Origin: Macrostomum lignano
Taxonomy: Eukaryota
Length of the DNA: 64,000 bases
Reading direction: 5' to 3'
Assembly: GCA_002269645.1 (NCBI GenBank)
Contig: NIVC01000491.1
Coordinates: forward strand, 124,001 to 188,000
The notes below the pieces were generated by a model, which had not been told where the DNA came from, searched no databases, and worked only from the letters and a program-made list of their open reading frames with translations. The position numbers and the translations under genes were made by a program. Below, in pieces: positions 13,263 through 39,700 of this stretch (position 1 is its first letter; each line of letters opens with the position of its first letter).

Positions 13263-13845
13263 TCAAGCACATCCACCTTCCAATTCATTGTTATTATCCA
13301 TTGCGTTCTCGGCACCAACTTGGGCAAGCAGTTCCTCTCGTCTGGCACACATTCGCTGAGTAGAAACTGGACCCTGCGTCAGAGAAACGTAGTGACGCAG
13401 TGCTTTGAAGGTGACGTCTTCGCTAAGAGCTGTTGGACCCAGCGCCAGCAACTGACGTAGCCGTTTTTGACCAAGCGCCCGGTTAAGCAGATTAATTAGC
13501 GTTCGTTCTGGCCCGCTAGACGTTGGTTCTGCGCAACAGCATTCTTGAATCCACGCCAATGGAATAGCCATCTGGTAGCTGGTGTCAGTTGCCAGCAGGA
13601 CCTTGTCCGGCTCACTTGGATCCTGCTTGGTGTGCTCCAGCCAGTCGCAGTTCCTGCTACCAGCATTCGAGTGTCGTTGGCTTGACCAGTCAAGTTGATC
13701 AGCTTGAATCTGGTTTAGTCGTCGGTTCAACTGCTCCAAGGTTGAATGAATCGGCGATATTGTGAATGTTAGAATGGCCGATAGTTGAGCAGTGTAGCGC
13801 TGGAAAAGTTCTTCAAGCATCGACTTGGTCAACGGTTGTTCCTGT

Positions 13846-13884
<39 letters not shown>

Positions 13885-14883
13885 AAAAGCTGCTGCGTAG
13901 CCAACAATCCGTGATGCTGTTGAGTCTGCTGCGGTGCCGCTGCAGTTAAAAAGGCACCCAGCGAAACAGCAGCAGTCGGAGGCAGATGATTTGGTGTCGA
14001 GATCGTCGGTCTGAGGGTTACACTTGCCTGTTGCTGCTGCTGCTGCTGCAACTGCTGGCACTGATTTTGCTGTGCTTGCGCCCTTGGAATCAGCGGGCGG
14101 GGGAGCACCATTTGCGGTGCGCGGCGCAGCAGCGGGATTGCGATAGTTGCACCTGTTGTCGCTGCGGCAGTTGTCGTTACAGTATGAAGCGACGGCTGCA
14201 GCGAATTTTGCACAGGCTGTAGTTGAGGCTCTGAATCGTCTTTTTCTACTGCTCCGTATTCGGCTTCAGTCTCGGTTGAATCGGCTTCCTCGCCGTCCTC
14301 GCCAGGCGGCGTCACCTCGTCGTCCACGTTGCTGGCTTGATCGTCCGCTCCACCAATAGTTGTCTCATCGCTAGCCGACGGCGTGACAAATGGACCGCCG
14401 AGATGTGCGGAAGTGGACGGATCGACGTCGATAGTGGTTGGCGTTGGCGATTTATCGGCCCGGCGGAGTCGCTTCCTATTACCCAGGCTGTGCTTGTAGA
14501 GCTCGGCAATTCGATCGCGATCTTTGATCCAGGTTGCCAGGGTGCTGGGCGGCAGGCGCATCTCTCGGATTATGGCCGACTTGGCCTCGCCGTTCTCGAT
14601 CTGTTCTCGATTGGATATGCAAAACCAAATAAAATTTAGCTGGTAATTTATCATATTACAATATCTCAGTTTTTCATTGTTTCAAACTCACCCTACTAAG
14701 CGTGTGCATTTTTGTCTCGACATCGAAATAGACCCGTTTGTTCCTTACAATCGCTCCGTTAGTCCGTCGCTGTTGAGCCGCGCTTTTAATTTTGATTCCA
14801 CCTCCACTGTTTCCGCCGACCTCTTCATCTTTCGCTTCGAGAACTCCGTCGCCATTAGCAACCACCAACACACTGTTTTGCAT
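13263..14883 (-). CDS. psq/CENP-B N-terminal-type HTH DNA-binding protein with polyQ, coiled coil and BEN-like C-terminal domain (~509 aa)
   Basis: Exon 1 14883-14692 (ATG; donor AGG|GTGAGT) and exon 2 14600-13263 (acceptor AACAG|ATC), phase 0. Splicing yields KRVYFDVETKMHTLSR|IENGEAKSAIIREMRLPPSTLATWIKDRDRI, which matches the psq/CENP-B_N HTH pattern. No DDE domain follows. Confidence 0.8.
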
Positions 14884-16850: not shown

Positions 16851-17385
16851 GAGAAACTATAGGCCGAGAAGCGTTAGTAATTTATAAATAATGAGGTACA
16901 AACACTGCAGGAGTCACAGTTTTAGTTTTTTGCGTTTTTTTAAATTTGCAATTAGCATTAAAATTTAAGTTTCAATTGAATGCCAGGCCGGCTACATATA
17001 CCTGACTGCATAAAATAGAACCGTTTGTTAAATGTGGCAGCCAGTGTAATATATAGCAGAATCGTTCCATTTCTCTTCAAATTGCAGAGTAACCCTCCGT
17101 CCATGACAAGAAAGTCAACTATACTGGTCTTCGAGTATTAGACTGTGCATCCTAATCTATATAGCATATTATATCTTATCGCACTCTTAAGAAGCGAACT
17201 AGTTTGCAAATTTTTCTTTAAAATAAAACCGCGCCTTGCAAGCAGAGGCCAGATCGAACTTGAAGAAGATTTCATTATACCTTAGAATACGTTCGACCTA
17301 AAGAACCCAATACATATATAGTGCCTTATAATAACAATATCAGTATTAGTCTCTATATATAAAGTTCTACAGTTAAGAAAGCAGA

Positions 17386-20300
17386 ATGGACAGCAGTTCA
17401 GTACAGACATTAGGCGCTGGTGCAGCAGCCGTGCTGGTTGGCACTCTGTTTTATCGTTGGCTGTCATATCCCAGCAGACAGTTCGGCCCGACGCCTCTGC
17501 TAAGTGTGCTTGAGGATCGGCAACAGTCCAGGTTGCTTTCGGTAAGGTGTTTCGCAATTTGTTGTGTTTGTTCTTCTCAGTTACATTTATAAGCGTTTTA
17601 TTTTAATTATTGATTTTAGGATGCTGTCAGTGTCTTGGGCACGCAGTGACGGGCACACATTCCGTTACAATCGGAGTTAAGCAGTTTTTAAAGTTTTTTT
17701 AGCCTATCTTGTTGATAAATAAGCGTTTGTGATGCTTTGGGAATCTGATCGCTTGGGGTTGGGAGTGTAATATCTTTGGAATGCAAAGTCTTGGGAATGT
17801 AATGTCTTTAAGAATGCGATGTCTCTAAAATGTGACGCTTGGGAATGTGAAGATTGGGAATGTTTATGTAATGTTTTGGATGCGATATCTTAAAAATGTT
17901 GCGCTAATTATTGCTTGGGCAAATTTTCGTGATGATTTGGCAAATAGATTTCGTGGTTTTCACAGAAGACACAATTATGTTGATGTGGTTCATGGAACGG
18001 AATTAAAAAAATTGAATTAACTACATGGAGCTTCTGTCTGACCTCAGCCTTGACATTTCAGCAATCCCCCCGTAAACCTTCACATCTCAGCAATCCCTCC
18101 GTAAGCCTTGACAGCACAGCAACCCCCCCCCCGAAAGTCTTGATATCTCAGCAGTTCCCCCCGTAAGCCTTGACATCTCAGCACCCCCCCCCGAAAGTCT
18201 TGATAGCTCAGCAGTTCCCCCCGTAAGCCTTGACATCTCAGCACCCCCCCCCCGAAAGTCTTGATAGCTCAGCAGTTCCCCCCGTAAGCCTTGACATCTC
18301 AGCAACCCCCTCCCCCGAAAGTCTTGATATCTCAGCAGTTCCCCCCGTAAGCCTTGACATCTCAGCAACCCCCTCCCCCCGAAAGTCTTGATATCTCAGC
18401 AGTTCCCCCCGTAAGCCTTGACATCTCAGCAACCCCCGAAAGTCTTGATATCTCAGCAGTTCCCCCCGTAAGCCTTGACATCTCAGCAACCCCCGAAAGT
18501 CTTGATATCTCAGCAGTTCCCCCCGTAAGCCTTGACATCTCAGCAACCCCCGAAAGTCTTGATATCTCAGCAGTTCCCCCCGTAAGCCTTGACATCTCAG
18601 CAACCCCCGAAAGTCTTGATATCTCAGCAGTTCCCCCGTAAGCCTTGACATCTCAGCAACCCCCCGAAAGTCTTGATATCTCAGCAGTTCCCCCCGTAAG
18701 CCTTGACATCTCAGCAACCCCCCGAAAGTCTTGATATCTCAGCAGTTCCCCCCGTAAGCCTTGACATCTCAGCAACCCCCCGAAAGTCTTGATATCTCAG
18801 CAGTTCCCCCCGTAAGCCTTGACATCTCAGCAACCCCCCGTATTCTCAGTTGCAAAATTTCGGTTAGAAGCACTAGCACAGACCATGAAGTATCTTATTT
18901 CAGACTGCCCCGCCCCGTCACAGAATGCATGCCATGAACAAAACAGTAGCTATATTTTGCAATGTTCGTAAAACTTAGAAGCACTCAGACAAGTTTTGCT
19001 AGGCGTGGGCATGGGCACTTCTTTCTATTTTACGAGTACTTTCCTACGTTTAGCCATCAGCGCTCGTTGTTTTCAGTGCTGGGAAATCTTTTTTCCAAGT
19101 AATTTTTGCAGATCATTTCTCTACAATCGTTTTACTTCTTTCTTTAGCTTCCGAAACAAATGCGCTTCGTTTTTAAAAGCTTCTCGAAAAGTAGTCGTAG
19201 ACAAGAAAAAAGAGAGAAGAGAAGCCGTATTTTCTTACTCTCAGATCAGGACCAAGCTACCAGGCCGGACTCGCTTCCATTAAACAATTTAGCAGCCACT
19301 GGTTTCGAGTCTACGACATTCGTTTCATTTTTTGGCTGTGTTGAGGAGGCCACGGCGCAAGCGGTTTGGGTGAGGTCTGAGGGTGCAGAGCTTGGGGTGG
19401 GTGGGGTGGGGGTTGTGCGTGCCCTGTGGGGGGGGGTTGTGCGTGCGCTGCGGGGGTGAGGCGCTGCGGGGCGCGGCGGAGTCTAAAACTAAAACCAGAA
19501 CTAAATAAAGGCTGACGTAGACAAAATCTGGTAAGGGCCAGATTTGGAAAGACTTGGATGTACATCCACGCTTTGCTAGAGTGTACATTGGCTTTATTTA
19601 TCTGGGATAGAGGGAGAGAGATGTGAATGAACAGTGTTGTAGAACGATAAATAGCAGCAGCCCTTATTCTACGAACTTGCTTTAACATTTTCACCCCCTC
19701 TCTAGAGGCTCGCCCTCTATATTAATTGTTCAGTAATTTAACAACAGCTTTAATTTTTTTAAAACCAAACGAACAAAAGATTCTTCCACTAAAGTCTATA
19801 CTAATATACTGATAAATGGGTAATCAAAGTTCAACAGGACAATATTCTCCCAGCGGAGATGGAAATAACAATAAGTCTGGAACAATGCGCCAATCCAAGT
19901 CTGGCACATTGGTATTTACACGTTACGAAACTCAATCTACTCTCTTACCTGTAAGTACTTTAGTATAATATATAATATGCCTTTAATCTAAATGTAAATG
20001 AAAGCTCTAGTTAATAATACGCGTAGGTCAAGTCTGAAAACTGAACTGAAAGAGACCATTTATTATCGCGAGACTTGATTCTTATCTCTGCGCTTTAGTT
20101 TGAAGTTCGAATTCGAAACGGCCGAACTAAATATTATTAGACCTTATTCGCACTAATATATATACTATAGGCATAAGTGACGTGGTTGCCTCTAATTTTA
20201 GTATGAGCTACAACTACAACCACAACTAGCTAAAGGTCAAAAGTTACGTTAAAAGTCTTGAACTATTGCCAAGTCACGACTGATGGACCAGCAGATTAGT

Positions 20301-23300
20301 CATTAAAAAATCCAAATGAACAAAACACGCATTCTGGTTCTGGCACTGGCACTAGCCATCTATCGTAAATATCTACTGTTATGCTAAAAATAGACCTTAT
20401 AGCTTAACTAACTTTTATTTATAACAAATGCAAATTTTCTAACGCGAAACCAAAACTCGTACTATTTAAGCAACAGCCTAAGAGTGACTTAGTAATAGCG
20501 CCATCATGTGACTTTTCTTATGCATTCCAGCACACTACAGCAGGTTTCTATTGTATGATGTTTTTATTTATAACAGCTTGGGTTGTGGGCAAAATGGGTT
20601 TTGAAAAGCATGATATACAAATTTGTTGATGTCACATGATATTCTGCAAGGAGTAAGACTCTCTGAGGGGTGAGATTCTAGAGCCGCTTGTCTCTTAGGG
20701 GTGAGATTCTAGAGCCGCTTGTCTCTTAGGGGTGAGATTCTAGAGCCGCTTGTCTCTTAAGCTCATTCTAGAGCCGCTTGTCTCTTAGGGGTGAGATTCT
20801 AGAGCCGCTTGTCTCTTTTAGGGGTGAGATTCTGGGGCCGCTTGTCTCTGAGGGGTGAGATTCTGGGGCCGCTTGTCTCTGAGGGGTGAGATTCTAGAGC
20901 CGCTTGTCTCTTTTAGGGGTGAGATTCTGGGGCCGCTTGTCTCTGAGGGGTGAGATTCTGGGGCCGCTTGTCTCTGAGGGGTGAGATTCTGGGGCCGCTT
21001 GTCTCTTAGGGGTGAGATTCTAGAGCCGCTTGTCTCTTTTAGGGGTGAGATTCTGGGGCCGCTTGTCTCTGAGGGGTGAGATTCTGGGGCCGCTTGTCTC
21101 TGAGGGGTGAGATTCGGGGGCCGCTTGTCTCTGAGGGGTGAGATTCTGGGGCCGCTTGTCTCTGTTAGGGGTGAGATTCTGGGGCCGCTTGTATCTGAGG
21201 GGTGAGATTCTGGGGCCGCTTGTCTCTGAGGGGTGAGATTCTGGGGCCGCTTGTCTCTGTTAGGGGTGAGATTCTGGGGCCGCTTGTCTCTGATGGGTGA
21301 GATTCTAGAGCCGCTTGTCTCTCTTTAAGTGGTGAGATTCGTGAACTCGTGAGAGTCTATATATTCTGTTTTTTCATGCCCAACAAACTGTAAAGTCCGC
21401 TTTATACTAACTCACAAGCTACTCGCACTCACTCACCCACCTGTTCAGGATGGCTCTCGATGCTGGCCATTCTCGGACTCGACCGAGATTATCGAGTACT
21501 GCTACGAAGAGGCCAAAACTTTGCACGACGGGTTCCTTCGCGGCATCCGCCAGTCGAACAATGGACCCTGCTTGGGTACTCGGGTTGGCGAAGGCCCATA
21601 CGAGTGGCTGACCTACCAGCAGGTGTATGATCAGGCTAGGGAGCTGGGCAGCGCGCTGACAGGTCGGCTGGGCTTGTCTCGCGGTGAATTTGTTGGAGTC
21701 TATTCGCAAAACCGAGCTGAATGGGTGCTGACTGAAGTGGCTTGCAATCAGTTCTCACTGGTGCTCGTGCCGCTGTATGACACCCTGGGCACTGAGGCGT
21801 GCAGTCACATCCTCAGCCAGACCAGCTCGAGTGTTGTTGTTGTCGACTCCGAATCCAAAGCTAGGAATCTGTTGCAGTGCAAAGCTGAGGCGCCATCGTT
21901 TCGACATGTGGTGCTGATGGGGATTGATTCCCCTAAACCGGAGCTGGTCAAAGAGGCTCAGGAGGCCGGGGTGGAGCTGCACGCTTGGTCTGAGCTTGTG
22001 AGCTGGGGTAGAGAGAATCTCGCCGAGGTGAACCCGCCTGCGCCTGACGATTTGGCTACTCTGTGCTACACTAGCGGCACTACTGGTGAGCTTGTCTACC
22101 GATATGTATCGCTTAATTCATGTATTCGTGTATTAATCATGCGTTGACTAATCATGATTATCACTCAAATTTGAAACTCTCACAAACTCGAAAGTTCACT
22201 CAAAATCGAAGCTTCACTCAAACTCGAAGCTTAACTCAAACTCGAAGCTTCACTCAAACTCGAAGCTTCACTCAAACTCGAAGCTTTACTCAAACCCGAA
22301 GTTTAACTCAAACTGGAAGCTTAACTCAAACTCGAAGCTTCACTCAAACTCGAAGCTTAACTCAAACTCGAAGCTTAACTCAAACTCGAAGCTTAACTCA
22401 AACTCGAAGCTTCACTCAAACTCGAAGCTTCACTCAAACTCGAAGCTTCACTCAAACTTGAAGCTTTACTCAAACTCGAAGCTTAACTCAAACTCGAAGC
22501 TTAACTCAAACTCGAAGCTTTACTCAAACTCGAAGCTTTCACACAAACTCGGAGCTTCACTCAAGCTCGAAGCTTTACTCAAACTCAAAGCTTCACTCAA
22601 ACTCGAAGCTTCACTCAAACTCGAAGGTTTACTCAAACTCGAAGCTTCACTCAAACTCGAAGCTTTCACACAAACTCGGAGCTTCACTCAAACTCGAAGC
22701 TTTACTCAAACTCAAAGCTTCACTCAAACTCGAAGCTTCACTCAAACTCGAAGCTTTACTCAAACTCGAAGCTTTCACACAAACTCGGAGCTTCACTCAA
22801 ACTCGAAGCTTTACTCAAACTCAAAGCTTCACTCAAACTCGAAGCTTTACTCAAACTCGAAGCTTCACTCAAACTCGAAGCTTTACTCAAACTTAAAGCT
22901 TTCACTCAAACTCGAAGCTTCACTCAAACTTGAAGCTTTTACTCAAACTCGAAGCTTCACTCAAACTCAATTCTCTCTTAAGTTTCTATGGCGCTATCCT
23001 ATTTATTTTTGATATTTTTCTATTTATTTTTATCTTTAAATTTCTATAACTTGCATAAGTAAATAGATAAATTATGACTTCAATTGTGTTCCCCAGGTGT
23101 ACCCAAGGGTGTGCAGCTCACACACAAGAATATAATGAGCAACATGGCTGGCGTGTACAGTGTGCTGTTGTTAGACCAGAAGAGCAACGCTAATCAGGTG
23201 AGGCCTGCTTGCTTTTTACCTGTGATGAGTTTTAGCCATCAAAACTAATATGGATAATTTGTGAACATATAGTAGTTTTAGTGTCTGTAGCAGTGATATT

Positions 23301-26300
23301 TTAATATATTTGTATCGTGTTCTCACTACTTGGGTTGGGATACTGATGGAGTCTTATCTCTCGGGGTGAGATACTGATGGAGTCATCTCTAGGGGTGAGA
23401 TACTGATGGAGTCATCTCTAGGGGTGAGATACTGATAGTCATCTCTAGGGATGAGAGACTGATGGAGTCTTACCTCCAGGGGTGAGATACTGGTTGAGTC
23501 TTATCTCTAGGAGCTAAGACTCCATAAGGCTAAGGGTAAGTTGCTGATAGAGTCTCATCTCTAGGCGTGAGATACTGATGGGGTCTTATCTCTAAAGGTG
23601 AGATACTAATGGAGTCATCTCTAGGGGTGAGATACTGATGGAGTCATCTCTAGGGGTGAGATACTGATGGAGTCTTATCTCTAGGGGTGAGATACTGATG
23701 GAGTCATCTCTAGGGGTGAGATACTGATGGAGTCATCTCTAGGGGTGAGATACTGATAGTCATCTCTAGGGATGAGAGACTGATGGAGTCTTACCTCCAG
23801 GGGTGAGATACTGGTTGAGTCTTATCTCTAGGAGCTAAGACTCCATAAGGCTAAGGGTAAGTTGCTGATAGAGTCTCATCTCTAGGCGTGAGATACTGAT
23901 GGGGTCTTATCTCTAAAGGTGAGATACTAATGGAGTCATCTCTAGGGGTGAGATACTGATGGAGTCATCTCTAGGAGTGAGATACTGATGGAGTCTTATC
24001 TCTAGGAGTGAGATACTGATGGAGTCTTATCTCTAGGAGTGAGATACTGATGGAGTCTTATCTCTAGGGGTGAGATACTGATGGAATCTTATCTCTAGGG
24101 ATGAGAGACTGATGGAGTCTTATCTCTAGGAGTGAGATACTGATGGAGTCTTATCTCTAGGAGTGAGATACTGATGGAGTCTTATCTCTAGGGGTGAGAT
24201 ACTGATGGAATCTTATCTCTAGGGATGAGAGACTGATGGAGTCTTATCTCTAGGAGTGAGATACTGATGGAGTCTTATCTCTAGGGATGAGAGACTGATG
24301 GAGTCTTATCTCTAGGGATGAGAGACTGATGGAGTCTTATCTCTAGGGATGAGAGACTGATGGAGTCTTATCTCTAGGGATGAGAGACTGATGGAGTATT
24401 ATCTCTAGGAGTGAGATACTGATGGAGTCTTATCTCTAGGGGTGAGATACTGATGGAATCTTATCTCTAGGGATGAGAGACTGATGGAGTCTTATCTCTA
24501 GAAGTGAGAGACTGATGGAGTCTTATCTCTAGGGATGAGAGACTGATGGAGTCTTATCTCTAGGGATGAGAGACTGATGGAGTCTTATCTCTAGGGGTGA
24601 GATACTGATAGAGTCTCATCTCTAGGGGTGAGATACTGATAGAGTCTCATCTCTAGGGGTGAGATACTGATTGAGTCTTATCTCTAGGAGTGAGATACTG
24701 ATAGAGTCTCATATCTAGGGGTGAGAGACTGATGGATTCTTATCTCTAGGGGTGAGATACTGATGGAGTCTTATCTCTAGGGATGAGAGACTGATGGAGT
24801 CTTATCTCTAGAAGTGAGAGACTGATGGAGTCTTATCTCTAGGGATGAGAGACTGATGGAGTCTTATCTCTAGGGATGAGAGACTGATGGAGTCTTATCT
24901 CTAGGAGTGAGATACTGATGGAGTCTTATCTCTAGGGGTGAGATACTGATGGAATCTTATCTCTAGGGATGAGAGACTGATGGAGTCTTATCTCTAGGGA
25001 TGAGAGACTGATGGAGTCTTATCTCTAGAAGTGAGATACTGATGGAGTCTTATCTCTATGGATGAGAGACTGATGGAGTCTTATCTCTAGGGATGAGAGA
25101 CTGATGGAGTCTTATCTCTAGGAGTGAGATACTGATGGAGTCTTATCTCTAGGGGTGAGATACTGATGGAATCTTATCTCTAGGGATGAGAGACTGATGG
25201 AGTCTTATCTCTAGAAGTGAGAGACTGATGGAGTCTTATCTCTAGGGATGAGAGACTGATGGAGTCTTATCTCTAGAAGTGAGAGACTGATGGAGTCTTA
25301 TCTCTAGGGATGAGAGACTGATGGAGTCTTATCTCTAGAAGTGAGAGACTGATGGAGTCTTATCTCTAGGGATGAGAGACTGATGGAGTCTTATCTCTAG
25401 AAGTGAGAGACTGATGGAGTCTTATCTCTAGGGATGAGAGACTGATGGAGTCTTATCTCTAGAAGTGAGAGACTGATGGAGTCTTATCTCTAGGGATGAG
25501 AGACTGATGGAGTCTTATCTCTAGGGATGAGAGACTGATGGAGTCTTATCTCTAGGGATGAGAGACTGATGGAGTCTTATCTCTAGGGGTGAGATACTGA
25601 TAGAGTCTCATCTCTAGGGGTGAGATACTGATAGAGTCTCATCTCTAGGGGTGAGATACTGATTGAGTCTTATCTCTAGGAGTGAGATACTGATAGAGTC
25701 TCATATCTAGGGGTGAGAGACTGATGGATTCTTATCTCTAGGGGTGAGATACTGATGGAGTCTTATCTCTAGGGGTGAGATACTGATGGAGTCTTATCTC
25801 TAGGAGTGAGATACTGATTGAGTCTTATCTCTAGGGGTGAGATACTGATGGAGTCTTATCTCTAGGAGTGAGATACTGATTGAGTCTTATCTCTAGGGGT
25901 GAGATACTGATGGAGTCTTATCTCTAGGGGTATAGAGGAAGAGGAGATTCTAATCTAGTCTAGCTTATCTAAGAGTGAGAGTCTTCAGTGGTCATTTGCG
26001 ATAAGATTTTCATATTTAAATTTCATAACACGCCTAGTTATTACGGCTTCATCTACTATAAGATAATTATCGTATTAAAATAGTTGCAACCCCTCACTAC
26101 TAACTGCAGCAGGTCCTGCCGCCTCTGACGCCGGAAGACACCTACCTGTCCTACCTGCCCCTGGCGCACATGTTCGAGCGTTGCGCAATCACCATGTGCT
26201 TCCTGAACGGCATGCGTGTCGGATTCTTCCGCGGCGACGTTCGCCAGCTGATGGAGGACATGCAGGCTCTGCGGCCAACCCTGTTCTGCACCGTGCCGCG

Positions 26301-28528
26301 GCTGCTCAACCGCATGTACGACCGGGTGCTCGCTGGCGTCTCCGGCAGCGTCATCAAGTCCAAGCTGCTGCAGATGGCTGTTGATAGGAAGACTCGAATG
26401 CTCGAATGTGGAATCATACGACGGGACACGATGTGGGATAAATTGGTGTTCTCTAAGGTGCACCAGCTGACTGGAGGCCGGGTCCGAGTGGTGATTACAG
26501 GTGAGAGCGGAGTTGGTGCTTGATTGATCTGATATCGATTTTTATTAGTCCGATATCGATTTTTTCACCGATATCGATTTTTATTAGCCAGATATCGATT
26601 TTTTCACAGATATCGATTTTTTTTGCCGATATCGATTTTTATTTAACCGATATCGATTTTTCCACCGATATTGATTTATCAGTCGGATATCGATTTCTTA
26701 TAATCCTAAGATGGATATTTATTTCCTCAATATCGATTTTTATTTAACCGATATCGATTTTTCCACCGATATTAATTTATCAGTCGGATATTGATTTCTT
26801 ATAATCCTAAGATGGATATTTATTTCCTCGATATCGATTTTTAACTTATATTTGTTTTTTTAACTCGATATCTATTTTTAATGCCTCGATATTTATTTTT
26901 TACTTCGATATCGATTTTCATTACCTGGATATCGATTTTTATTAACTCGATATCGATTCTTATTAACTCGATATCGATTTTTATTAACTCGATATCTATT
27001 TTTATTACCTCGGTATCGGTTTTTCGATATTGATTTTTTTCAATATCGAGTTTTATTAACTTAATATCGATTTTTAAAAAAACTTGATGTGCATTTCTAT
27101 TAAACCTTTTTTCTATTTTGATTGGTCCAACATCGATTTGAATAAATCCGATACTAACGTTATCTTATCCAATATCAATATTAACTAATCATATCGTTAA
27201 TTTCATTAATCCCCGTTCAGGCTCGGCCCCCATCGGCGCCAAGGTGATGCAGTTCATCCGCGCCGCTTTCGGCTGCCCAGTATTCGAAGGCTACGGCCAG
27301 ACTGAGGCCACTGCCGCCGTCACGGTCACCCTGCCCGGCGAGATCAGCGTGGGTCACGTGGGCGCCCCGGTTCCCTGCAACCACGTCAAGCTGGTCGACG
27401 TGCCCGAGATGGGCCTGAAAGCCAGCGACGGTCGTGGCGAAGTTTGCGTCCGCGGAGCCAACGTGTTCAGCGGCTACTTCCGGATGGATGACAAAACTGC
27501 CGAGGTGCTGGAGCCAGACAACTGGCTGCACACGGGCGACATTGGCGAGTGGACGGAGAACGGCTGCTTGAAAATTGTGGACCGTAGGAAGCATTTGTTT
27601 AAACTGGCTCAGGGCGAATACGTGGCACCTGAGAAGATTGAGCAACTCCTTAGCCGGTCTCAGTATGTGGCACAGATCTTTGTTGATGGCGACTCACTTG
27701 AGGTGATTAGATTCAACTTGAAAACTTTACAATGATTTAAATTACAAGTTTTGCTCCTACGTTATTAGTACCCACGAACTTAAAATCGTAAAGTACAAGT
27801 GTACTCCTACATCATTAGTACACACGAACTTGAACTCGTAAAGTACAAGTGTACTCCTACATTATTAGTACACACGAACTTTAACATCGTAAAGTACAAG
27901 TGTACTTCTACATTATTAGCACACACGAACTTTAAAATTGTAAATTAAAAGTTTTCTCCTACGTTATAAGTACACGCGAACTTTAAAATTGTAAAGTACA
28001 AGTTTACTCGTACATTATTAGTACACGCGAACTTTAACATCGTAAAGTACAAGTGTACTCCTTCCTACATTTTAAGTACACGCGAACTTTAAAATCGTGC
28101 TACTCGTACGTTATTAGGACATGCGCACTAAAAGTGCAAGTGCACTTTATGAAAAGCGTCAAGTACAAGTGCACTAATGCATATTGCAGATCTACGTCTT
28201 GGGCATAGTGGTCCCTGACCCGGACGTGGTCCTGCCCTGGGCTAAGTCACACGGCTTGCCTCAGGACCTCGAGGCCCTGTGCAAGGACCCTAACGGGCCG
28301 CTGAAGCGAGCGATCCTGGAGGACCTGAACCGGATCGGCCGCGAGAACGGGCTTAAAGGCTTCGAACTGTGCAAGGACATCATGCTGTGCGCTGAGCAGT
28401 TCTCAGTTGAGAACGGCCTGCTAACGCCGACGTTCAAGTCGCGGCGGCCGGATCTGCGCGTGAGATTTCGCGACGACTTCAAGCGAATGTACGATGGACT
28501 CAGGGCCTCCAGCAGTGCAGCAGCTTAA
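17386..28528 (+). CDS. ACSL: Long-chain fatty acyl-CoA synthetase (ACSL1/5/6-like), ~700 aa
   Basis: Exons 17386-17541, 21449-22085, 23097-23197, 26110/26113-26500, 27221-27702 and 28190-28528, with compatible phases. Motifs: LCYTSGTTG|VPKGV (P-loop), YLSYLPLAHMFER, FEGYGQTE, WLHTGDIGEW, IVDRRKHLFKLAQGEYVAPEKIE, NGLLTPTFK. Confidence 0.95.
18045..18840. repeat. ~57-60-bp dimeric minisatellite (GAAAGTCTTGATATCTCAGCAGTTCCCCCC / GTAAGCCTTGACATCTCAGCAACCCCC)
   Basis: Alternating A/B subunits seen directly. Confidence 0.92.
19816..19950 (+). CDS. Putative alternative first coding exon of ACSL (MGNQSS..., N-myristoylation-type start)
   Basis: ATG 19816 opens 45 codons (MGNQSSTGQYSPSGDGNNNKSGTMRQSKSGTLVFTRYETQSTLLP) ending at a consensus GTAAGT donor in phase 0, compatible with exon 2 at 21449. 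Confidence 0.7.
20660..21340. repeat. ~29-bp minisatellite (AGGGGTGAGATTCTRGRGCCGCTTGTCTCT)
   Basis: Direct observation. Confidence 0.92.
22170..22970. repeat. ~18-19-bp minisatellite (CACTCAAACTCGAAGCTT)
   Basis: Direct observation. Confidence 0.92.
23335..25930. repeat. 31-bp satellite (GAGATACTGATGGAGTCTTATCTCTAGGGGT), ~2.6 kb
   Basis: Direct observation; contains higher-order duplications. Confidence 0.95.
26522..27065. repeat. AT-rich degenerate repeat built on GATATCGATTTTT
   Basis: Direct observation. Confidence 0.85.
27740..28170. repeat. ~45-bp degenerate tandem repeat (AAAGTACAAGTGTACTCCTACATTATTAGTACACACGAACTT...)
   Basis: Direct observation. Confidence 0.8.
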
Positions 28529-29478: not shown

Positions 29479-32400
29479 GTCACTGATCCCAGTTTCATTT
29501 GCAATGTCACTCTCCATCATTTTCACTCGTCATGTCACTGATCCCAGTTTCATTTGCAATGTCACTCTCCATCATTTTCACTCGCCTTGTCACTTATCCC
29601 CGTTTCATTTGCAATGTCACTCTCCATCATTTTCACTCGTCATGTCACTGATCCCAGTTTCATTTGCAATGTCACTCTCCATCATTTTCACTCGCCTTGT
29701 CACTGATCCCCGTTTCATTTGCAATGTCACTCTCCATCATTTTCACTCGCCTTGTCACTTATCCCCGTTTCATTTGCAATGTCACTCTCCATCATTTTCA
29801 CTCGCCATGTCACTGATCCCAGTTTCATTTGCAATGTCACTCTCCATCATTTTCACTCGTCATGTCACTGATCCCAGTTTCATTTGCAATGTCACTCTCC
29901 ATCATTTTCACTCGCCTTGTCACTTATCCCCGTTTCATTTGCAATGTCACTCTCCATCATTTTCACTCGTCATGTCACTGATCCCCGTTTCATTTGCAAT
30001 GTCACTCTCCATCATTTTCACTCGCCTTGTCACTTATCCCCGTTTCATTTGCAATGTCACTCTCCATCATTTTCACTCGCCATGTCACTGATCCCAGTTT
30101 CATTTGCAATGTCACTCTCCATCATTTTCACTCGCCATGTCACTGATCCCAGTTTCATTTGCAATGTCACTCTCCATCATTTTCACTCGCCTTGTCACTT
30201 ATCCCCGTTTCATTTGCAATGTCACTCTCCATCATTTTCACTCGCCATGTCACTGATCCCAGTTTCATTTGCAATGTCACTCTCCATCATTTTCACTGGC
30301 CATGTCACTGATCGCAGTTTCACTTGCAATGTCACTCTCCATCATTTTCACTCGCCATGTCACTGATCCCAGTTTTATTTGCAATGTCACTCTCCATCAT
30401 TTTCACTCGTCATGTCACTGATCCCCGTTTCATTTGCAATGTCACTCTCCATCATTTTCACTCGTCATGTCACTGATCCCAGTTTCATTTGCAATGTCAC
30501 TCTCCATCATTTTCACTCGCCATGTCACTGATCGCAGTTTCACTTGCAATGTCACTCTCCATCATTTTCACTCGCCATGTCACTGATCCCAGTTTTATTT
30601 GCAATGTCACTCTCCATCATTTTCACTCGTCATGTCACTGATCCCAGTTTCATTTGCAGTGTCACTCTCCATCATTTTCACTCGTCATGTCACTGGGGAG
30701 TACGACGTTTGCTTGCGGGAAGTTTGCTTGCCGAACTTTGCTTGCCGAACTTTGCTTGCGGAATTTTGCCTGCCGAACTTTGCTTGCCGAACTTTGCTTG
30801 CGGAATTTTGCCTGCCGAACTTTGCTTGCCGAACTTTGCTTGCGGAATTTTGCTTGCTGAAGTTTGCTTGCCGAACTTTGCTTGCCGAACTTTGCTTGCA
30901 GGAAATTTGCTTGCAGGAACTTTGCCTGCCGAAGTTTGCTTGCCGAGCTTTGCTTGCAGGAATTTTGCTTGCCGAGCTTTGCTTGCAGGAATTTTGCTTG
31001 CCGAACTTTGCTTGCGAAATTTTGATGTCTGCTTTCTAGAAATTTGCAATCACACAATCGCAAGGTTTTAACTTGCAGAATTATTTTCTTGTTTGCTTGC
31101 TTGTTTTGATTGCTTGTAAAGTTGGTCAGTCAATTATTACTTACTACAGATGCTTTGCAAGTGGATTCTTATCAGGGTCGACGTAAACTGACTCTTGACT
31201 TTCAAAGCTTTCAAACTAGGCTTATAGAGTTTCATTCTAAGAATGTAGTATATAGAGTGCTTAGAGATTTAGTATAGGTAGATAGGGATCGGTAACAGTA
31301 TAAATCTTTGTAGTTCCTGATTTCAGCACGATTGAGCAGGTATGATAATTGCAGTGATGCTAATGTATAATATTGCATATACGAGCGTACTAATAATATT
31401 TTAGTATATAAAATGTAGTTAATAATCCGCCATATCCTCATACAAAATCATAACACTATAGGCGACTTCCACGAATCTTAGAAAATGAAAATTAGAAATA
31501 CAAGAGCTCAAAAATAGGTTTCTTTAAGGTTCCGCAATAATTTGGCTGGCAAACCTCGCAAGCAAATTTCCTGCAAGCAAAGTTCGGCAAGCAAACTTCC
31601 TGCAAGCAAACTTCGGCAAGCTTATGTGCAGCAAGCAAATTTCCTGCAAGCAAAATTCGGCAAGCAAAATTCGGCAAGCAAAGTTCGGCAAGCAAACTTC
31701 CTGCAAGCAAACTTCGGCAAGCTTATGTGCAGCAAGCAAATTTCCTGCAAGCAAAATTCGGCAGGCAAAATTCCGCAAGCAAAGTTCGGCAAGCAGACTT
31801 CCTGCAAGCAAACTTCGGCAAGCTTATGTGCAGCAAGCAAATTTCCTGCAAGCAAAATTCGGCAGGCAAAATTCCGCAAGCAAAGTTCGGCAAGCAGACT
31901 TCGGCAAGCAAAATTCCGCAAGCAAAGTTCGGCAAGCAGACTTCGGCAAGCAAAATTCCGCAAGCAAAGTTCGGCAAGCAGACTTCGGCAAGCAAAATTC
32001 CGCAAGAAAATTCGGCAAGCAGACTTCGGCAAGCAAACTTCTCGCAAGCAAATTTCATAGACCCTGTCACTGATCCCAGTTTCATTTGCAATGTCACTCT
32101 CCATCATTTTCACTCGCCTTGTCACTTATCCCCGTTTCATTTGCAATGTCACTCTCCATCATTTTCACTCGTCATGTCACTGATCCCAGTTTCATTTGCA
32201 ATGTCACTCTCCATCATTTTCACTCGCCATGTCACTGATCCCCGTTTCATTTGCAATGTCACTCTCCATCATTTTCACTCGCCTTGTCACTTATCCCCGT
32301 TTCATTTGCAATGTCACTCTCCATCATTTTCACTCGTCATGTCACTGATCCCCGTTTCATTTGCAATGTCACTCTCCATCATTTTCACTCGCCATGTCAC

Positions 32401-32925
32401 TGATCCCCGTTTCATTTGCAATGTCACTCTCCATCATTTTCACTCGCCATGTCACTGATCCCAGTTTCATTTGCAATGTCACTCTCCATCATTTTCACTC
32501 GTCATGTCACTGATCCCCGTTTCACTTGCAATGTCACTCTCCATCATTTTCACTCGCCATGTCACTGATCCCCGTTTCATTTGCAATGTCACTCTCCATC
32601 ATTTTCACTCGTCATGTCACTGATCCCCGTTTCATTTGCAATGTCACTCCATCATTTTCACTCGTCTTGTCACTGATCCCAGTTTCATTTGCAATGTCAC
32701 TCTCCATCATTTTCATTCGTCTTGTCACTGATCCCAGTTTCATTTGCAATGTCACTCTCCATCATTTTCATTCGTCTTGTCACTGATCCCAGTTTCATTT
32801 GCAATGTCACTCTCCATCATTTTCACTCGTCATGTCACTGGTCCCCGTTTCATTTGCAATGTCACTCTCCATCATTTTCACTCGTCATGTCACTGGTCCC
32901 AGTTTCACTTGCAATGTCACTCATT
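29479..32925. repeat. 55-bp satellite (GTCACTGATCCCAGTTTCATTTGCAATGTCACTCTCCATCATTTTCACTCGTCAT), split by an insertion at 30696-32064
   Basis: Arrays at 29479-30695 and 32065-32925 with the same unit and orientation. Confidence 0.95.
30696..32064. mobile_element. Non-autonomous foldback-type DNA transposon (long modular inverted arms, 8-bp TSD)
   Basis: TGTCACTG duplicated at 30688-30695 and 32065-32072; ends GGG...CCC; left arm of TTTGCTTGCCGAAC subrepeats is mirrored by a right arm of GCAAGCAAA subrepeats; AT-rich ~500-bp spacer without an ORF. Confidence 0.8.
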
Positions 32926-33796
32926 TTTGTTCAGAGTTAGAAAGCAAAGTCAAGGTTGAGTTCATCATTTCCGTCTCTTTCTCACTCTCGCTCTGCTTGC
33001 TCAGTGTTGAAGCTAACGAGTACCCCTAGCTACCATCAGCCATGCATGGTGATGAGGTGTGGAGCATGGAGTCGCATCTCTCAGCAGGGTGCTGCAAGCG
33101 CTCCCAAACACACACACTAATGGAACAGGCGCACAACAATGGATCACGCTGTGAGCATAGTAACGCGAGAAGGCAGGCGCACCTGCTCCGCCAGGGAATT
33201 AACGGGGTTCCAAAGCCTTCATCCTCTGCGCAGCTTCCTCTCTGCCTATAGCTTAACTTCAGTTTTGGTTGGCTGATTCAGCTATAGCAGCCATAATCAC
33301 AGAATATATATAGTCATTTCATCTTAAGTGTATCCAAGGCGTGGTGGGCATCAAAGAAATTCTTGGCCTAAGCCCGTTCAGCTCTGCACTCGCCATGGCA
33401 GGAAGTTAAGACGGAGAGAGGTAGATAGGCCCTATAACTCCTTAAGTCCTGCATGTATACCTGACCTTAGCGATTCTACTAAGAAGACTGAGAGAAGAGA
33501 GAAAGATTGAGATTGAGTGTGCACACTCAGACTCAGAGAAGCTTCCACACTGCACGCCACGATCGCTTGTGTGTATGTGTGTGTTTACCGAAAGACCGTT
33601 CCTTCAGAGCTCACACAGCATATATATGTAAGAGGGTATTACAACAAGACCTCCAATACAGCCAACCAATAAGCGTGCTTAGAGAAATCGACGGAGACCA
33701 AAAGTTAGCTATATATATGTACTGAGTTCCTCGGAAAGGCGACCTATTATATACTGAATCAGACTTCCGTTCCACCTAGACAGAGGCGGACGGACA

Positions 33797-36778: not shown

Positions 36779-39700
36779 GGTCCGTACACCCTGTTCTCTC
36801 TTTTTTCATAAAGATTTGAGTCCAGCGAACAAACAGCCCATTGAAGTAATTTTGATCTCTAATTTTGGCAGGAACTTAAGTGGGGACTTCAGACTGCGAC
36901 AAAAATAACACAGTTTCTTCAGGAACCAGCAAACTAAATATTCATCAACTAATGCTAAAATATTCCACAGAAAAACATAGAAAAATAAAGTAACTCATCA
37001 ATGTAATTGTGAGCGGCAATAGAATTACTTCTAGAGTAATACGTGCTCGTTGAGATTTTTGGCCCCAGAGCGAGCGACAGAGAGACTTAGTAGATGAGTT
37101 TGACGCCCAGGTGAGCTGGAAACATCACAGAGCAGAAGACGCGCAGTATTGTAAAACTTGAGGGGCGCATGCACGAGATGCCACAAATGCAGCGAGTCCT
37201 GTGAGTGAACCGCTCGCCAAAAAATGTCTTTCATAGCCCCCCGACTGCGCGAGATTGCAATCTGTTCAAAAGCTGCTGCAGCAGAGAATCGCGCACAGAA
37301 TGCTATAGCCAGTCGGGCAGACAGCCTTCGGACACTCCAACCCCAGCTTGAGCCGCAGGCGCAGACGGCAGGCCATTGCACATTGCACACACACACACTG
37401 GGGCTGGTTAACTGCCAATAAGTTTTCTGGCTTTCTCCTCTTCTCTCTTTCAGGTCTGACCCTCAACAGCCCCCGCCCTTAGTCCCCAAAGGTCTCATTC
37501 TATTTCTCTAGCGAAACTAGCACCTACTCACGCATTGGCTGTCCCAGCTGTCTCGCAGGCAAAACGCAAACCGAAACCCCCTATTACAGACAGGATCAGT
37601 GGAGCAACTTCTGAGAAAGATAAACTCTCAACTAGAAGCAGACACAGCGGCTTTAGTTGAGTCAACTCAAGCGGCCACGAAAGGAGTCACTACTAGCGCT
37701 GCCTGCGATAAAAAAGTCATGATGCGATCCAGACGAACTTCTGCTGGCGGCGACAACCACAGGAATGGATATGTAAGTGAAGTCTGCGCTATCGTTCTCA
37801 GATTGGTTTAACTGCTTCCTTAGTTCTCGAAATACCTGGATTATAAATTCGGAATTCTAATAGTAATATGATTACAGTAATGTGCAGATGTGCAACCGAC
37901 AGCTCAGCCGCAGCTATTTAAGCGGCGCATCTGAAGGCTGCGTACGGCTGTTCAGTCCAAGGACTGGGGGGGGGGGTCGCCATACACAGCCTCAATTATC
38001 CCAGCTAATGCTGGCACCCATTTTACAGCTGGGTGAACTGAAGAAATGTAGAGTTAAGCGTCTTGCTCAAGGAAACAACTTCTTAGGTCGAGAATCTTCT
38101 GAAATTTCAATAGATTGGTGCTTTTTTATGCGTTTCTAGTCAAGAAAAAACATGCTTGTAGTAGACTTCTTTTTCTGGAATTGAATTGAAAAAAATACAT
38201 ACATATTAAAACAAACAAATCCGTCAAAATCCATCTCGACACAGTCCGGCACACCTGACTTTGAGAACGGCGTCATTGTCAAGCAGCGCAAAGAGCTGCA
38301 GCTGCTGGTCTCGGAGCTGCGAGAACGCGACACCGAGCTCAACGAGTTGGTCAACTCGCACCAGAAGCAGCTCAGCAACTGGGAGGCGGACAGAAAGCGG
38401 CTCATTGTACTGGAAGAGAAGCTCCGACAGAAGGACCAAGAGTTGCAGGAGAAGAACGGGCAGGTGAGCATCAATTAACGCGGCTCTCAACCATAAAAAA
38501 GAGTTTTATTGAACTCTAAAAACATTCCTACATTGCAGCTGAAGTCTGCCATGTCCCGCCTGGAAGAGTCAGTCAAGCAGTCCGAAGAGCGAGCCCTGCA
38601 GGTGCAGGAGCTGCAGAAGCAGCAGGACCGCCTGCAGGACGAGAGCGCCGGCCTGCGCGGCACCTGCGAAGAGCTGGAGGACACAAACTACCAGCTGGAC
38701 CGGAGGCTGCGCGAGACCAGCGCTCAACTCGTCCAGGTGGAGACCCGAGCTGGTCAACTTGAGCAGGATGTGCACACGGCTGCTCAGAACCTGCACCAGC
38801 TGCTCCACCGACTCAAAGCCAGCGACACGTCTCGGAAAGAGCTCCAATCCCAGCAGGAAGAGCAGCGTCAGGAGAACGAGCAGCTGCGGGCTGAGATTCG
38901 AAAGCTGGCCGGCGAGAGCCGCGACCTGCTTCGCGTCAACGAGAAACTCCAGCAGCAGAGCGAGCAGCTGCAGAAAGACTGCCAGCTCGCCGCTGAAAGG
39001 GAACGACGCAAGGACGAGCTGGTGCAGAGCCAGCGACTCAAGCAAGAGCGGACAGACGCCGAGTTGCAGCAGCTGCGCGGGATGTACGAACGAATGCAGA
39101 TGGACTTGGCCGCGCTGACTACCAATCTGGACACGAATCGGGACGGTGCAGCCGGCGGCGGGACTGACGGAGGCGCGCTGCTGGAGGCCGACCTGGCCAG
39201 GTGGACCGGCGGCAGCTCCCGCGGCGGCGCGAACGGCAGCGCGCCTGCAGCAGTCAACGGCAGGCAGCAGCGACCTCCGCCGGCGTCGCTGCCGCTGTCC
39301 AGCAAGCCGCCACTGCGACGCGGCCCGCCGTCGACTGCGGCGTCCGTGGCCTCGTCGACGTTTTCACAGCCTCCCGCATCGTCGCAGCATTATCAGCAGC
39401 ATCATCATTATCAGCAACAACAGCAGCAGCAGCAGCAGCCGCCGCCGCCGCCCTATCACGTGGGCAGCGGCCGATTTCTAGGAAACAGCAGCGGCGGCGG
39501 CAGCGGCGGCGGCGGCGGCAGCGGCGGCAGATCCGGCGGCTCCCTGCCCGACTTGAGCCCCGGCGCCAACGAGGACTCCGACAGGTGGGCCGCCGCCTCC
39601 AAACGACTCGGCGGACGCGAATCCTCATCTGGGAGGCTGGTAAGTCAGGCTAGGATTCTCGAGTTTGGTTTCTTATTGAACTCACGTGTCTTTAGTATTG

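What the first reader, a model, noticed from the sequence alone, without database searches (positions are those of the whole stretch)
17386..21449. ACSL appears to switch membrane-targeting mode through two paralogous first exons
Seen in sequence: exon 1a (17386-17541) encodes a hydrophobic anchor (LGAGAAAVLVGTLFYRWL) and ends RQQSRLLS|. Exon 1b (19816-19950, absent from the ORF track) is hydrophilic, begins MGNQSS and ends ETQSTLLP|. Both have strong phase-0 donors (GTAAGG, GTAAGT) matching exon 2, and both end in QSxLL, suggesting exon duplication. Established: MGxxxS is the N-myristoyltransferase consensus, and ACSL N-termini determine localisation. Inference: one isoform is transmembrane-anchored and the other is myristoylated, i.e. 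an acyl-CoA-producing enzyme anchored by an acyl-CoA-derived lipid.
Basis: partly seen in the sequence, partly recalled or inferred. Interest (0 to 1): 0.7.

Follow-up and report, generated by a model that had tools for sequence, protein, structure and literature searches.

The report
Candidate alternative first exon in flatworm ACSL
A fatty-acid-activating enzyme gene of the flatworm Macrostomum lignano has, inside its first intron, a well-formed but unannotated second start exon. If it is used, it would replace the enzyme's membrane-spanning anchor with a tail carrying a lipid-attachment (myristoylation) signal; no RNA evidence for its use could be obtained here.

Summary
The window is Macrostomum lignano DNA. 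The gene is an ACSL1/5/6-type long-chain acyl-CoA synthetase (PAA82161.1, 701 aa), whose annotated protein uses exon 1a.

Exon 1b (19816-19950) is very unlikely to be a chance ORF:
- It runs from an ATG directly behind an in-frame TAA to a consensus GTAAGT donor, in the phase exon 2 needs.
- It ends in QSTLLP, in exactly the register of the Q-S motif that is near-invariant across animal ACSL1/5/6.
- It is intact in all three genomic copies.
- It starts with a clean N-myristoylation consensus (MGNQSST).

The weaknesses are these:
- No transcript or protein containing 1b could be found, and none of the three loci is annotated with it.
- Its codon usage is atypical (GC3 0.29, against 0.73 in exons 2-6).
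- The four substitutions between copies are 3 non-synonymous to 1 synonymous.
- 1a and 1b show no similarity beyond the terminal motif, so exon duplication is not shown. The shared QSxLL is better explained as the first ordered element of the enzyme body.

Verdict: a probable real alternative first exon (about 0.65-0.7), with myristoylation plausible but untested. Switching the ACSL N-terminus is a known principle; a myristoylated ACSL would be a new variant.

The parts
17386..17541 (+). Exon 1a: the annotated first coding exon (52 codons). It encodes the hydrophobic N-terminal anchor LGAGAAAVLVGTLFYRWL, ends ...RQQSRLLS, and has donor GTAAGG in phase 0.
   Evidence: Translation. Identical to the N-terminus of PAA82161.1/P0001. 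Maximum 19-residue Kyte-Doolittle hydropathy is 1.38, against -0.29 for 1b. The ortholog transcript of a related species has the same type of N-terminus (P0002, L003/L004).
19718..19815 (+). Putative 5' UTR / core promoter region of exon 1b. It holds a TATA-like TATATT at 19718, in-frame TGA and TAA stops directly before the ATG, and no ATG for 186 nt upstream.
   Evidence: The boundaries are inferred; no TSS data were available. No [TC]TNCAG trans-splice acceptor motif lies upstream of 1b.
19816..19950 (+). Candidate exon 1b: an unannotated alternative first coding exon of 45 codons. It is hydrophilic, begins MGNQSST (N-myristoylation consensus) and ends ETQSTLLP, in phase 0.
   Evidence: Intact in both other genomic copies: L002 identical; L001 has 4 substitutions and no indels. 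Residues 1-32 are predicted disordered, and order begins at about residue 38-41.
19951..19956 (+). Donor site GTAAGT of exon 1b.
   Evidence: It matches the M. lignano donor consensus GT[G/A]AG reported in PMC8629364 and is conserved in L001 and L002.
21449..22085 (+). Exon 2: the common acceptor exon (acceptor cctgttcag|G, phase 0). It starts DGSRCWPF and ends in the TSGTTG part of the AMP-binding signature.
23097..23197 (+). Exon 3 (VPKGVQLTH...).
   Evidence: the reconstructed protein equals P0001.
26110..26500 (+). Exon 4. It has a NAGNAG acceptor (ctgcag|cag|GTC); the annotated protein uses 26110.
27221..27702 (+). Exon 5 (GYGQTE, TGDIG, and the DRRKHLFKLAQGEY motifs).
28190..28528 (+). 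Exon 6, the last coding exon, including the TAA stop.

Best explanation
The locus is one of three near-identical copies of the Macrostomum lignano ACSL1/5/6-type long-chain acyl-CoA synthetase gene. The gene has six coding exons.

The annotated mRNA starts with exon 1a, which encodes the family's usual N-terminal hydrophobic membrane anchor. Exon 1b lies about 2.3 kb further into intron 1. It is most likely a genuine, so far unannotated, alternative first coding exon, transcribed from its own start region and spliced 19950^21449 to the same exon 2.

Exon 1b replaces the anchor with a roughly 38-residue disordered, Ser/Gly/Asn-rich segment. After removal of Met1, its N-terminal Gly fits the N-myristoyltransferase consensus. 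This gives a peripherally and reversibly membrane-associated (or largely soluble) enzyme in place of an integral one.

Both first exons must end in Q-S-x-hydrophobic-hydrophobic-x, because this is the first ordered element of the conserved enzyme body. That requirement explains the QSxLL resemblance without invoking a recent exon duplication.

Shown: gene identity, exon structure, reading-frame compatibility, motif register, and retention in three copies. Inferred: transcription of 1b, the 1b-exon 2 junction, myristoylation, and any effect on localisation.
For: - Gene and species identity: 100% to PAA82161.1; PF00501, 7e-93.
- Gene model with consensus splice sites, giving an open 694-codon CDS for the 1b form.
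- 1b is the top-scoring first-exon candidate in the intron, and such a candidate arises in only 6% of shuffles.
- An in-frame TAA and TGA lie immediately upstream of the ATG. Any cis-spliced inclusion behind 1a would therefore hit a stop, so 1b can only be productive as a first exon.
- The 186 nt upstream are free of ATGs.
- QSTLLP is in the exact register of the family motif: QS[VILT] appears in essentially all of about 119 ACSL1/5/6 homologues; Q40 is invariant and S41 at least 90% conserved in alignment A2. The pattern plus a donor occurs only 3 times in 128 kb of sequence searched, two of them being 1a and 1b.
- The shared residues use different codons in 1a and 1b, which points to protein-level constraint rather than copied DNA.
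- AlphaFold2: residues 1-32 have pLDDT below 50, while the block 41-50 averages 90 and has a beta bridge 42-43/49-50.
- The ORF and the GTAAGT donor are intact, without indels, in L001 and L002, although the flanks carry indels.
- MGNQSST fits G-{EDRKHPFYW}-x(2)-[STAGCN]-{P} with Ser at position 6. That pattern occurs in 4/225 ORFs (1/225 with Ser/Thr required at position 6).
- Predicted ACSL1/5-like proteins without a membrane anchor that still end in the QSV motif exist in other lophotrochozoans: Owenia P0005 and Lineus isoform X2 P0022.
- N-terminal variants of ACSL6 arising from different first coding exons change localisation (PMC13184358).
Against: - No RNA or protein evidence. The exact 1b isoform is not in a 15-billion-protein collection. 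The 90%-identity cluster of P0001 holds only 1a-type models or models that start at exon 2, from all three loci.
- Searches with the 1b N-terminus found nothing relevant.
- The Mlig_3_7 annotation was RNA-seq guided (PMC5730564) and still lists only 1a.
- GC3 of 1b is 0.29, against 0.73 in exons 2-6 and 0.54 in 1a.
- Between the window and L001, 1b has 1 synonymous and 3 non-synonymous changes, against 25:7 in exons 2-6. My one-sided Fisher arithmetic on these counts gives p of about 0.06, i.e. little or no purifying selection is detectable over this short divergence.
- The Kozak context of 1b is weaker (T at -3) than that of 1a (A at -3).
- 1b has no Cys and only a weak basic cluster, so myristate alone would give only weak membrane binding.
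Confidence: 0.45

Rival explanations
1. Exon 1b is real and expressed but is not lipidated. It simply yields an anchor-less, soluble or peripherally bound ACSL, like the short predicted isoforms of Owenia and Lineus or mammalian ACSL4 variant 1. On this reading the MGNQSS start is incidental.
For: - Anchor-less N-termini that end in the QSV motif and have no MG start exist in related phyla (P0005, P0022).
- The PS00008 pattern is permissive: 4/225 random ORFs match it.
- There is no second membrane signal, i.e. no Cys and only 4 basic against 2 acidic residues.
Against: Gly2, Asn3 and Ser6, a non-Pro position 7 and a hydrophilic stretch at positions 11-17 together form a strong NMT substrate signature (established knowledge of NMT specificity; not computed with a dedicated predictor here).
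Confidence: 0.2
2. Exon 1b is a silent or decaying relic. It was once a first exon, which explains its ACSL-like end and donor, but it is no longer transcribed or spliced at meaningful levels in M. lignano.
For: - It is absent from the annotation of all three loci and from all protein collections searched.
- Its GC3 of 0.29 lies close to the AT-rich flanks, whose GC is 0.33.
- dN/dS is about 1 for the four substitutions, against about 0.1 in the enzyme body.
- One copy (L001) has a 3.5-kb insertion carrying a THAP/P-element-like transposase about 190 nt upstream of the ATG.
Against: - The ORF, the ATG, the in-frame upstream stop, the myristoylation consensus, the QSTLLP end and the GTAAGT donor are all intact in three copies, with no indel, while neighbouring intron sequence has indels.
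- Disordered N-terminal linkers normally evolve fast, so 3 non-synonymous changes in the middle of the linker are not informative.
- The database searches had little power: the 1a-based positive controls were also not found.
Confidence: 0.3
3. Pure coincidence: an intronic ORF that happens to abut a GT.
For: ORF-plus-strong-donor candidates arise in 6% of shuffled introns. The intron also holds another long ORF with a GTGAGG donor (19160-19369) that has no ACSL-like features.
Against: The additional, independent match to the family-invariant QS-hydrophobic motif in exact register has a frequency of about 1e-4 per position in this window. The myristoylation consensus adds a further factor of 1-2%. 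Together these put the joint chance at roughly 1e-6 or less.
Confidence: 0.02
4. 1b is an internal cassette exon, or belongs to another transcript, rather than being a first exon of the ACSL gene.
For: AG dinucleotides preceded by T-rich sequence lie 20-36 nt upstream of the ATG.
Against: Reading in from exon 1a (phase 0) through either AG runs into TGA/TAA before the ATG, so inclusion would truncate the protein. No other gene is called in this intron at any of the three loci. The exon's end is ACSL-specific.
Confidence: 0.03

Closest known systems
Vertebrate/invertebrate ACSL1/5/6 subfamily (long-chain-fatty-acid--CoA ligase 1, 5, 6)
   Same: - About 50% identity over more than 90% of the length to mollusc, annelid, brachiopod and vertebrate ACSL1/5.
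- PF00501 is present.
- Exon 1a encodes the same type of N-terminal hydrophobic anchor, followed by the conserved QS motif.
   Different: The candidate 1b N-terminus has no counterpart among the roughly 245 homologues retrieved. None of the full-length animal sequences listed starts with a myristoylation consensus.
Mammalian ACSL6 long/short and ACSL4 variant 1/variant 2 N-terminal isoforms
   Same: Different first coding exons or start sites give different N-termini on one catalytic body and change organelle targeting. For ACSL6, see PMC13184358. For ACSL4 v1/v2, Kuch et al. 2014 is cited there; the details are recalled from my own knowledge.
   Different: In those cases the variants add, remove or modify hydrophobic or presequence-like segments. 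A lipid-modified (N-myristoylated) variant is not described in the papers my searches returned.
N-myristoylated proteins with MGNxxS-type starts (e.g. recoverin, calcineurin B, ARF family)
   Same: Met-Gly-Asn...Ser6 followed by a hydrophilic, flexible segment fits the PROSITE PS00008 pattern and the known NMT preference for Ser at position 6 (established knowledge; pattern check).
   Different: There is no experimental or predictor-based confirmation. There is also no second membrane signal (palmitoylatable Cys or a strong polybasic patch).
Anchor-less predicted ACSL1/5-like isoforms of other lophotrochozoans (Owenia fusiformis P0005; Lineus longissimus isoform X2 P0022)
   Same: A short hydrophilic N-terminus joins the body just before the QSV motif. 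In Lineus it is annotated as isoform X2, implying an alternative 5' exon.
   Different: These are shorter (about 10-20 residues before QS), do not start with MG, and have no sequence similarity to 1b.

Membership tests
ACSL1/5/6-type long-chain acyl-CoA synthetase | AMP-binding (adenylate-forming) domain with the signatures TSGTTGxPKG, GYGQTE and TGD...DRxK | tested here: met
   PF00501 at 7e-93, residues 94-508. The motifs YTSGTTGVPKG, EGYGQTE, HTGDIG and DRRKHLFKLAQGEY are visible in the translation.
ACSL1/5/6-type long-chain acyl-CoA synthetase | Full-length similarity to named ACSL1/5/6 proteins, including the N-terminal QS motif and the NNGPCLG region outside the Pfam domain | tested here: met
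   46-53% identity over 91-96% of the query to ACSL1/5 of molluscs, annelids, brachiopods and vertebrates.
ACSL1/5/6-type long-chain acyl-CoA synthetase | Long-chain fatty acid:CoA ligase activity | not testable with these tools
   Needs an enzyme assay.
Genes with mutually exclusive alternative first coding exons (alternative promoters) | Two upstream exons, each with its own ATG and a donor in the same phase, joining one common acceptor | tested here: met
   1a (GTAAGG) and 1b (GTAAGT) are both phase 0, as is exon 2. Both joined CDSs are open.
Genes with mutually exclusive alternative first coding exons (alternative promoters) | Transcripts containing each junction, and a separate transcription start (or SL acceptor) | not testable with these tools
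   No RNA-seq mapping is available. Database look-ups were negative but had low power. There is only a TATA-like hexamer at 19718 and an ATG-free 186-nt leader.
Tandemly duplicated (paralogous) exons | Significant sequence similarity between the two exons beyond a short motif | tested here: not met
   DNA local alignment score is 13, against a shuffle mean of 12.2 and maximum of 17. Protein local score is 17, p=0.76. Only QSxLL is shared, and it is encoded by different codons.
N-myristoyltransferase substrates | Met1-Gly2, a permissive residue 3, a small or Ser/Thr residue 6, non-Pro at 7, and a hydrophilic linker after residue 10 | tested here: met
   MGNQSSTGQYSPSGDGNN; pattern check. No dedicated NMT predictor was available.
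N-myristoyltransferase substrates | Covalent myristate on Gly2 of the expressed protein | not testable with these tools
   Needs metabolic labelling or mass spectrometry.

The most novel reading that the evidence does not exclude
M. lignano makes two ACSL isoforms from one gene. One is integral-membrane (1a). The other (1b) is held on membranes only by an N-terminal myristate, which is a product of the acyl-CoA pool that ACSLs themselves supply. The localisation of the 1b enzyme could then respond to myristoyl-CoA availability or to a myristoyl switch. This would be the first ACSL shown to be N-myristoylated in an animal. Several MG-start LACS-like fragments from other eukaryotes (P0168, P0170, P0185, P0242) hint that the solution may have arisen more than once.
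Probability: 0.4. Interest if true: 0.55.

Novelty: new variant of a known kind. Interest (0 to 1): 0.4.

Why it matters
Where an ACSL sits decides which pathway its acyl-CoA enters. In mammals this is set largely by N-terminal variants.

A lipid-anchored isoform would add a reversible, metabolically coupled way to position the enzyme. It would sit in a genetically tractable regenerating flatworm in which transgenic reporters can be made.

On the practical side, the finding points to a probable gap in the M. lignano annotation: a missing alternative 5' exon at three loci. It also shows that the 'QSxLL' resemblance is a structural requirement of the family, not a sign of exon duplication.

Tried and rejected
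1. Exact look-up of the full 694-aa 1b isoform: not in the collection.
2. Word-indexed homology search with 1b plus 59 residues of exon 2: no candidates at all, not even P0001, so the tool is blind to short queries.
3. Profile search with the first ~260 residues of the 1a, 1b and P0002 forms: only distant ACSL fragments of 27-52% identity. No Macrostomum fragment and no 1b-like N-terminus appeared.
4. Full HMMER scan of 1.84 billion cluster representatives with the 45 residues of 1b: three hits, all to low-complexity repeat proteins.
5. Look-up of the unspliced 50-aa ORF: not on record.
6. Guessing the partial proteins that a k=31 assembly graph would yield at the 1b/exon 2 and 1a/exon 2 branch points: none found. 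This includes the 1a controls, so the test had no power.
7. Exon duplication: tested by DNA and protein local alignment with shuffles and rejected.
8. 1b as a repeat or TE fragment: it is single-copy in the window.
9. Internal cassette exon: rejected because of in-frame stops.
10. SL trans-splice acceptor upstream of 1b: no [TC]TNCAG motif is present there; one is present 14 nt upstream of the 1a ATG.
11. Literature: no paper holds the gene id Mlig017940, and no report of a myristoylated ACSL was found.


Full report
**Identity of the locus**

The window is genomic DNA of the free-living flatworm Macrostomum lignano. I joined the open segments at consensus splice sites: 17386-17541, 21449-22085, 23097-23197, 26110-26500, 27221-27702 and 28190-28528. 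The result is a 701-residue protein identical to GenBank PAA82161.1, BOX15_Mlig017940g2.

The protein carries PF00501 (7e-93). It is 46-53% identical over more than 90% of its length to ACSL1/5-type long-chain acyl-CoA synthetases of molluscs, annelids, brachiopods, nemerteans and vertebrates.

The Mlig_3_7 assembly holds three near-identical copies of the gene: the window, L001 on NIVC01000733 and L002 on NIVC01000690. This fits the known partial genome duplication of the sequenced line (PMC5730564).

**Check of the observation**

- Exon 1a encodes MDSSSVQTLGAGAAAVLVGTLFYRWLSYPSRQFGPTPLLSVLEDRQQSRLLS, followed by GTAAGG.
- The stretch 19816-19950 encodes MGNQSSTGQYSPSGDGNNNKSGTMRQSKSGTLVFTRYETQSTLLP, followed by GTAAGT.
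- Exon 2 begins at 21449 behind cctgttcag, in phase 0.
- Splicing 1b to exon 2 gives an open 694-codon CDS.

**Is exon 1b more than a chance ORF?**

Taken alone, the ORF plus donor is only mildly unusual. In 2000 block-shuffles of the intron, 6% contained an ATG-ORF of at least 45 codons ending in phase 0 on GTRAGT.

The decisive feature is the end of the exon. Essentially all of about 119 retrieved ACSL1/5/6 proteins have Q-S-[VILT] followed by hydrophobic residues at a fixed distance upstream of the NNGPCLG region. Examples are scallop NQSVILE|DGSRC and vertebrate MQSVEV. In a 26-sequence alignment the Q is invariant and the S is at least 90% conserved, and MAFFT places Q40/S41 of 1b on these columns.

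In 1a (QQSRLLS|), in the ortholog of a related species (RQSQVLP|, P0002) and in 1b (TQSTLLP|), the motif sits in exactly the same register relative to the exon 2 junction. The pattern QS.[LIVM][LIVM]. directly followed by GT occurs three times in the whole window on both strands, and two of those are 1a and 1b.

Further features fit a first exon.
- TGA and TAA stops lie in frame immediately before the ATG, so the exon cannot be read through from 1a.
- The 186 nt upstream contain no ATG; 7% of ATG-to-ATG gaps in the window are that long.
- The sequence is single-copy, not a repeat.
- The ORF, the donor and both terminal motifs are intact in all three genomic copies. L002 is identical, and L001 has four substitutions and no indels, while the flanking intron carries several indels.

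A purely accidental origin is therefore very unlikely.

**Why both exons end alike**

I could not support that. Local DNA and protein alignments of the two exons and their flanks score no better than shuffles, and the shared residues are encoded by different codons.

An AlphaFold2 model of the 1b isoform, built with a 26-sequence alignment (mean pLDDT 83.5), gives a simpler reason. Residues 1-32 have pLDDT below 50. The 31-40 block averages 59 and the 41-50 block averages 90, and residues 42-43 form a beta bridge with 49-50. The last six to eight residues of the first exon are therefore the first ordered element of the enzyme body, and any functional first exon has to supply them.

An ancient duplication cannot be excluded, but the evidence does not require one.

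**What speaks against a working exon**

- None of the three loci is annotated with a 1b isoform. The 90% cluster of the protein contains only three 1a-type proteins and three older models that start at exon 2.
- No protein containing 1b was found by any search available to me. These searches had low power: a short query did not even recover the window's own protein, and the 1a-based controls were also not found.
- The codon usage of 1b is unlike the rest of the gene: GC3 is 0.29, against 0.73 in exons 2-6 and 0.54 in 1a.
- Of the four substitutions separating the window from L001, three are non-synonymous (Q26R, L32S, T35P). Exons 2-6 show 25 synonymous to 7 non-synonymous changes. My Fisher arithmetic on these counts gives a one-sided p of about 0.06.
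- All three replacements lie in the predicted disordered linker, and both functional ends are untouched, so this result is weak either way.
- The L001 copy also has a 3.5-kb insertion about 190 nt upstream of the ATG. The insertion carries a 977-residue ORF with a THAP-type zinc finger and a transposase-like body.
- The ATG context of 1b (T at -3, G at +4) is weaker than that of 1a (A at -3, G at +4).

**Myristoylation**

MGNQSST fits the PROSITE pattern G-{EDRKHPFYW}-x(2)-[STAGCN]-{P} and has the preferred Ser at position 6. It is followed by a hydrophilic, Gly/Ser/Asn-rich stretch, as in established NMT substrates (this comparison rests on my own knowledge).

In the window, 4 of 225 ATG-ORFs of at least 40 codons match the loose pattern, and 1 of 225 matches the version requiring Ser/Thr at position 6.

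The segment has no cysteine and only a modest excess of basic residues. Myristate alone would therefore give weak, reversible membrane binding. The enzyme body may add affinity of its own.

No dedicated predictor and no experiment were available, so this step is inference.

**Mechanism proposed**

Two transcription starts, or possibly SL trans-splicing for one of them, produce mRNAs that differ only in the first coding exon.
- The 1a form is a signal-anchored integral membrane ACSL, like ACSL1.
- The 1b form lacks the anchor and carries a flexible tail of about 38 residues, which is probably N-myristoylated. It is expected to be soluble or peripherally bound.

I put the probability that 1b is a used first exon at about 0.65-0.7, and the probability that it is also myristoylated at about 0.45 overall.

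**Comparison with what is known**

It is established that ACSL N-termini direct localisation, and that alternative first coding exons generate such variants. [quoted passage not shown] That paper also cites the ACSL3 and ACSL4 work.

Anchor-less predicted isoforms that join the body just before the QSV motif exist in Owenia and Lineus.

My literature searches found ACSLs only as suppliers of myristoyl-CoA for NMT: yeast FAA genes (PMC2120220, PMC2289438) and ACSL1 with FSP1 (PMC9992462). They did not find ACSLs as NMT substrates. If true, the 1b isoform would therefore be a new variant of a known kind, not a new principle.

**Limits**

The decisive datum is RNA-seq or 5'-end reads across 19950^21449, and it could not be reached with the tools. 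The three genomic copies are too similar (1.6-3% divergence) to measure selection on 135 bases. The only related-species sequence available is a 1a-type transcript (L003/L004), which says nothing about 1b.

Noticed in passing
window 21449 (exon 2 acceptor); window 17367-17372: The 35-nt M. lignano spliced leader ends in ATG (PMC8629364), and exon 2 starts in phase 0. SL trans-splicing directly onto exon 2 would therefore give an in-frame M+DGSRCWPF... protein with neither N-terminus, a speculative third isoform. The reported trans-splice acceptor motif [TC]TNCAG occurs 14 nt upstream of the 1a ATG (ctacag|TTAAG) but not upstream of 1b or exon 2. At the 1a site the SL ATG would be out of frame with the 1a ORF.
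   Followed up: partly
L001 12268-15749 (corresponds to an insertion at window ~19625-19632): One of the three gene copies has a ~3.5-kb insertion about 190 nt upstream of the 1b ATG. On the minus strand it carries a 977-aa ORF with an N-terminal THAP-like zinc finger (CxxC...FHFFP) and a transposase-like body, i.e. a P-element/THAP9-like transposon. This is the same copy that has the three amino-acid changes in 1b.
   Followed up: partly
proteins P0168, P0170, P0185, P0242: Several long-chain acyl-CoA synthetase fragments from other, unidentified eukaryotes (Logan, JGI and ENA assemblies) start with MG and fit the myristoylation pattern: MGVSHSA..., MGSSAST..., MGITCSD.... Lipid-anchored LACS N-termini may therefore recur outside animals.
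   Followed up: no
window 18046-18838, 20660-21322, 22161-22968, 23332-25931, 26531-27075: Every intron of the gene is filled with long tandem arrays: units of 57/114, 31, 18, 31 (85 copies) and 21/58/101 nt. The 31-nt units in intron 1 (…GGGGTGAGATTCTGGGGCCGCTTG…) and intron 3 (GGGGTGAGATACTGATGGAGTC…) share a GGGGTGAGAT core. Array lengths differ between the three gene copies.
   Followed up: no
window 26104-26112 and 23097-23197: Exon 4 has a NAGNAG acceptor (ctgcag|cag|GTC). The older UniProt/WormBase-type models (P0123-P0125, 637 aa) start at exon 2 and omit 12 residues (VLLLDQKSNANQ) by using an internal GT in exon 3, so the exon 3/4 junction is modelled in two ways.
   Followed up: no
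window 29500-32950: A very large array of ~55-nt repeats, open in several frames, lies just downstream of the ACSL 3' end. It is interrupted around 30650-32050 by a different short-period repeat.
   Followed up: no
window 13263-14654 (-) and 38509-39717 (+): Two long ORFs in neighbouring genes: a 463-aa poly-Q-rich protein on the minus strand upstream of the ACSL gene, and a 402-aa coiled-coil / Gln-, Gly-rich ORF downstream. The gene calls for L001 and L002 also list a 940-residue product with faint EF-hand hits further upstream on the minus strand.
   Followed up: no
L003 / L004 (Logan SRR30276812, SRR30276804): Transcripts from an unidentified related species encode a 700-aa ortholog (79% identity) with a 1a-type N-terminus ending QRQSQVLP, which shares its final LP with M. 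lignano 1b rather than 1a. The 160-nt 5' UTR shows no similarity to the M. lignano sequence upstream of 1a and contains no spliced-leader tail.
   Followed up: partly
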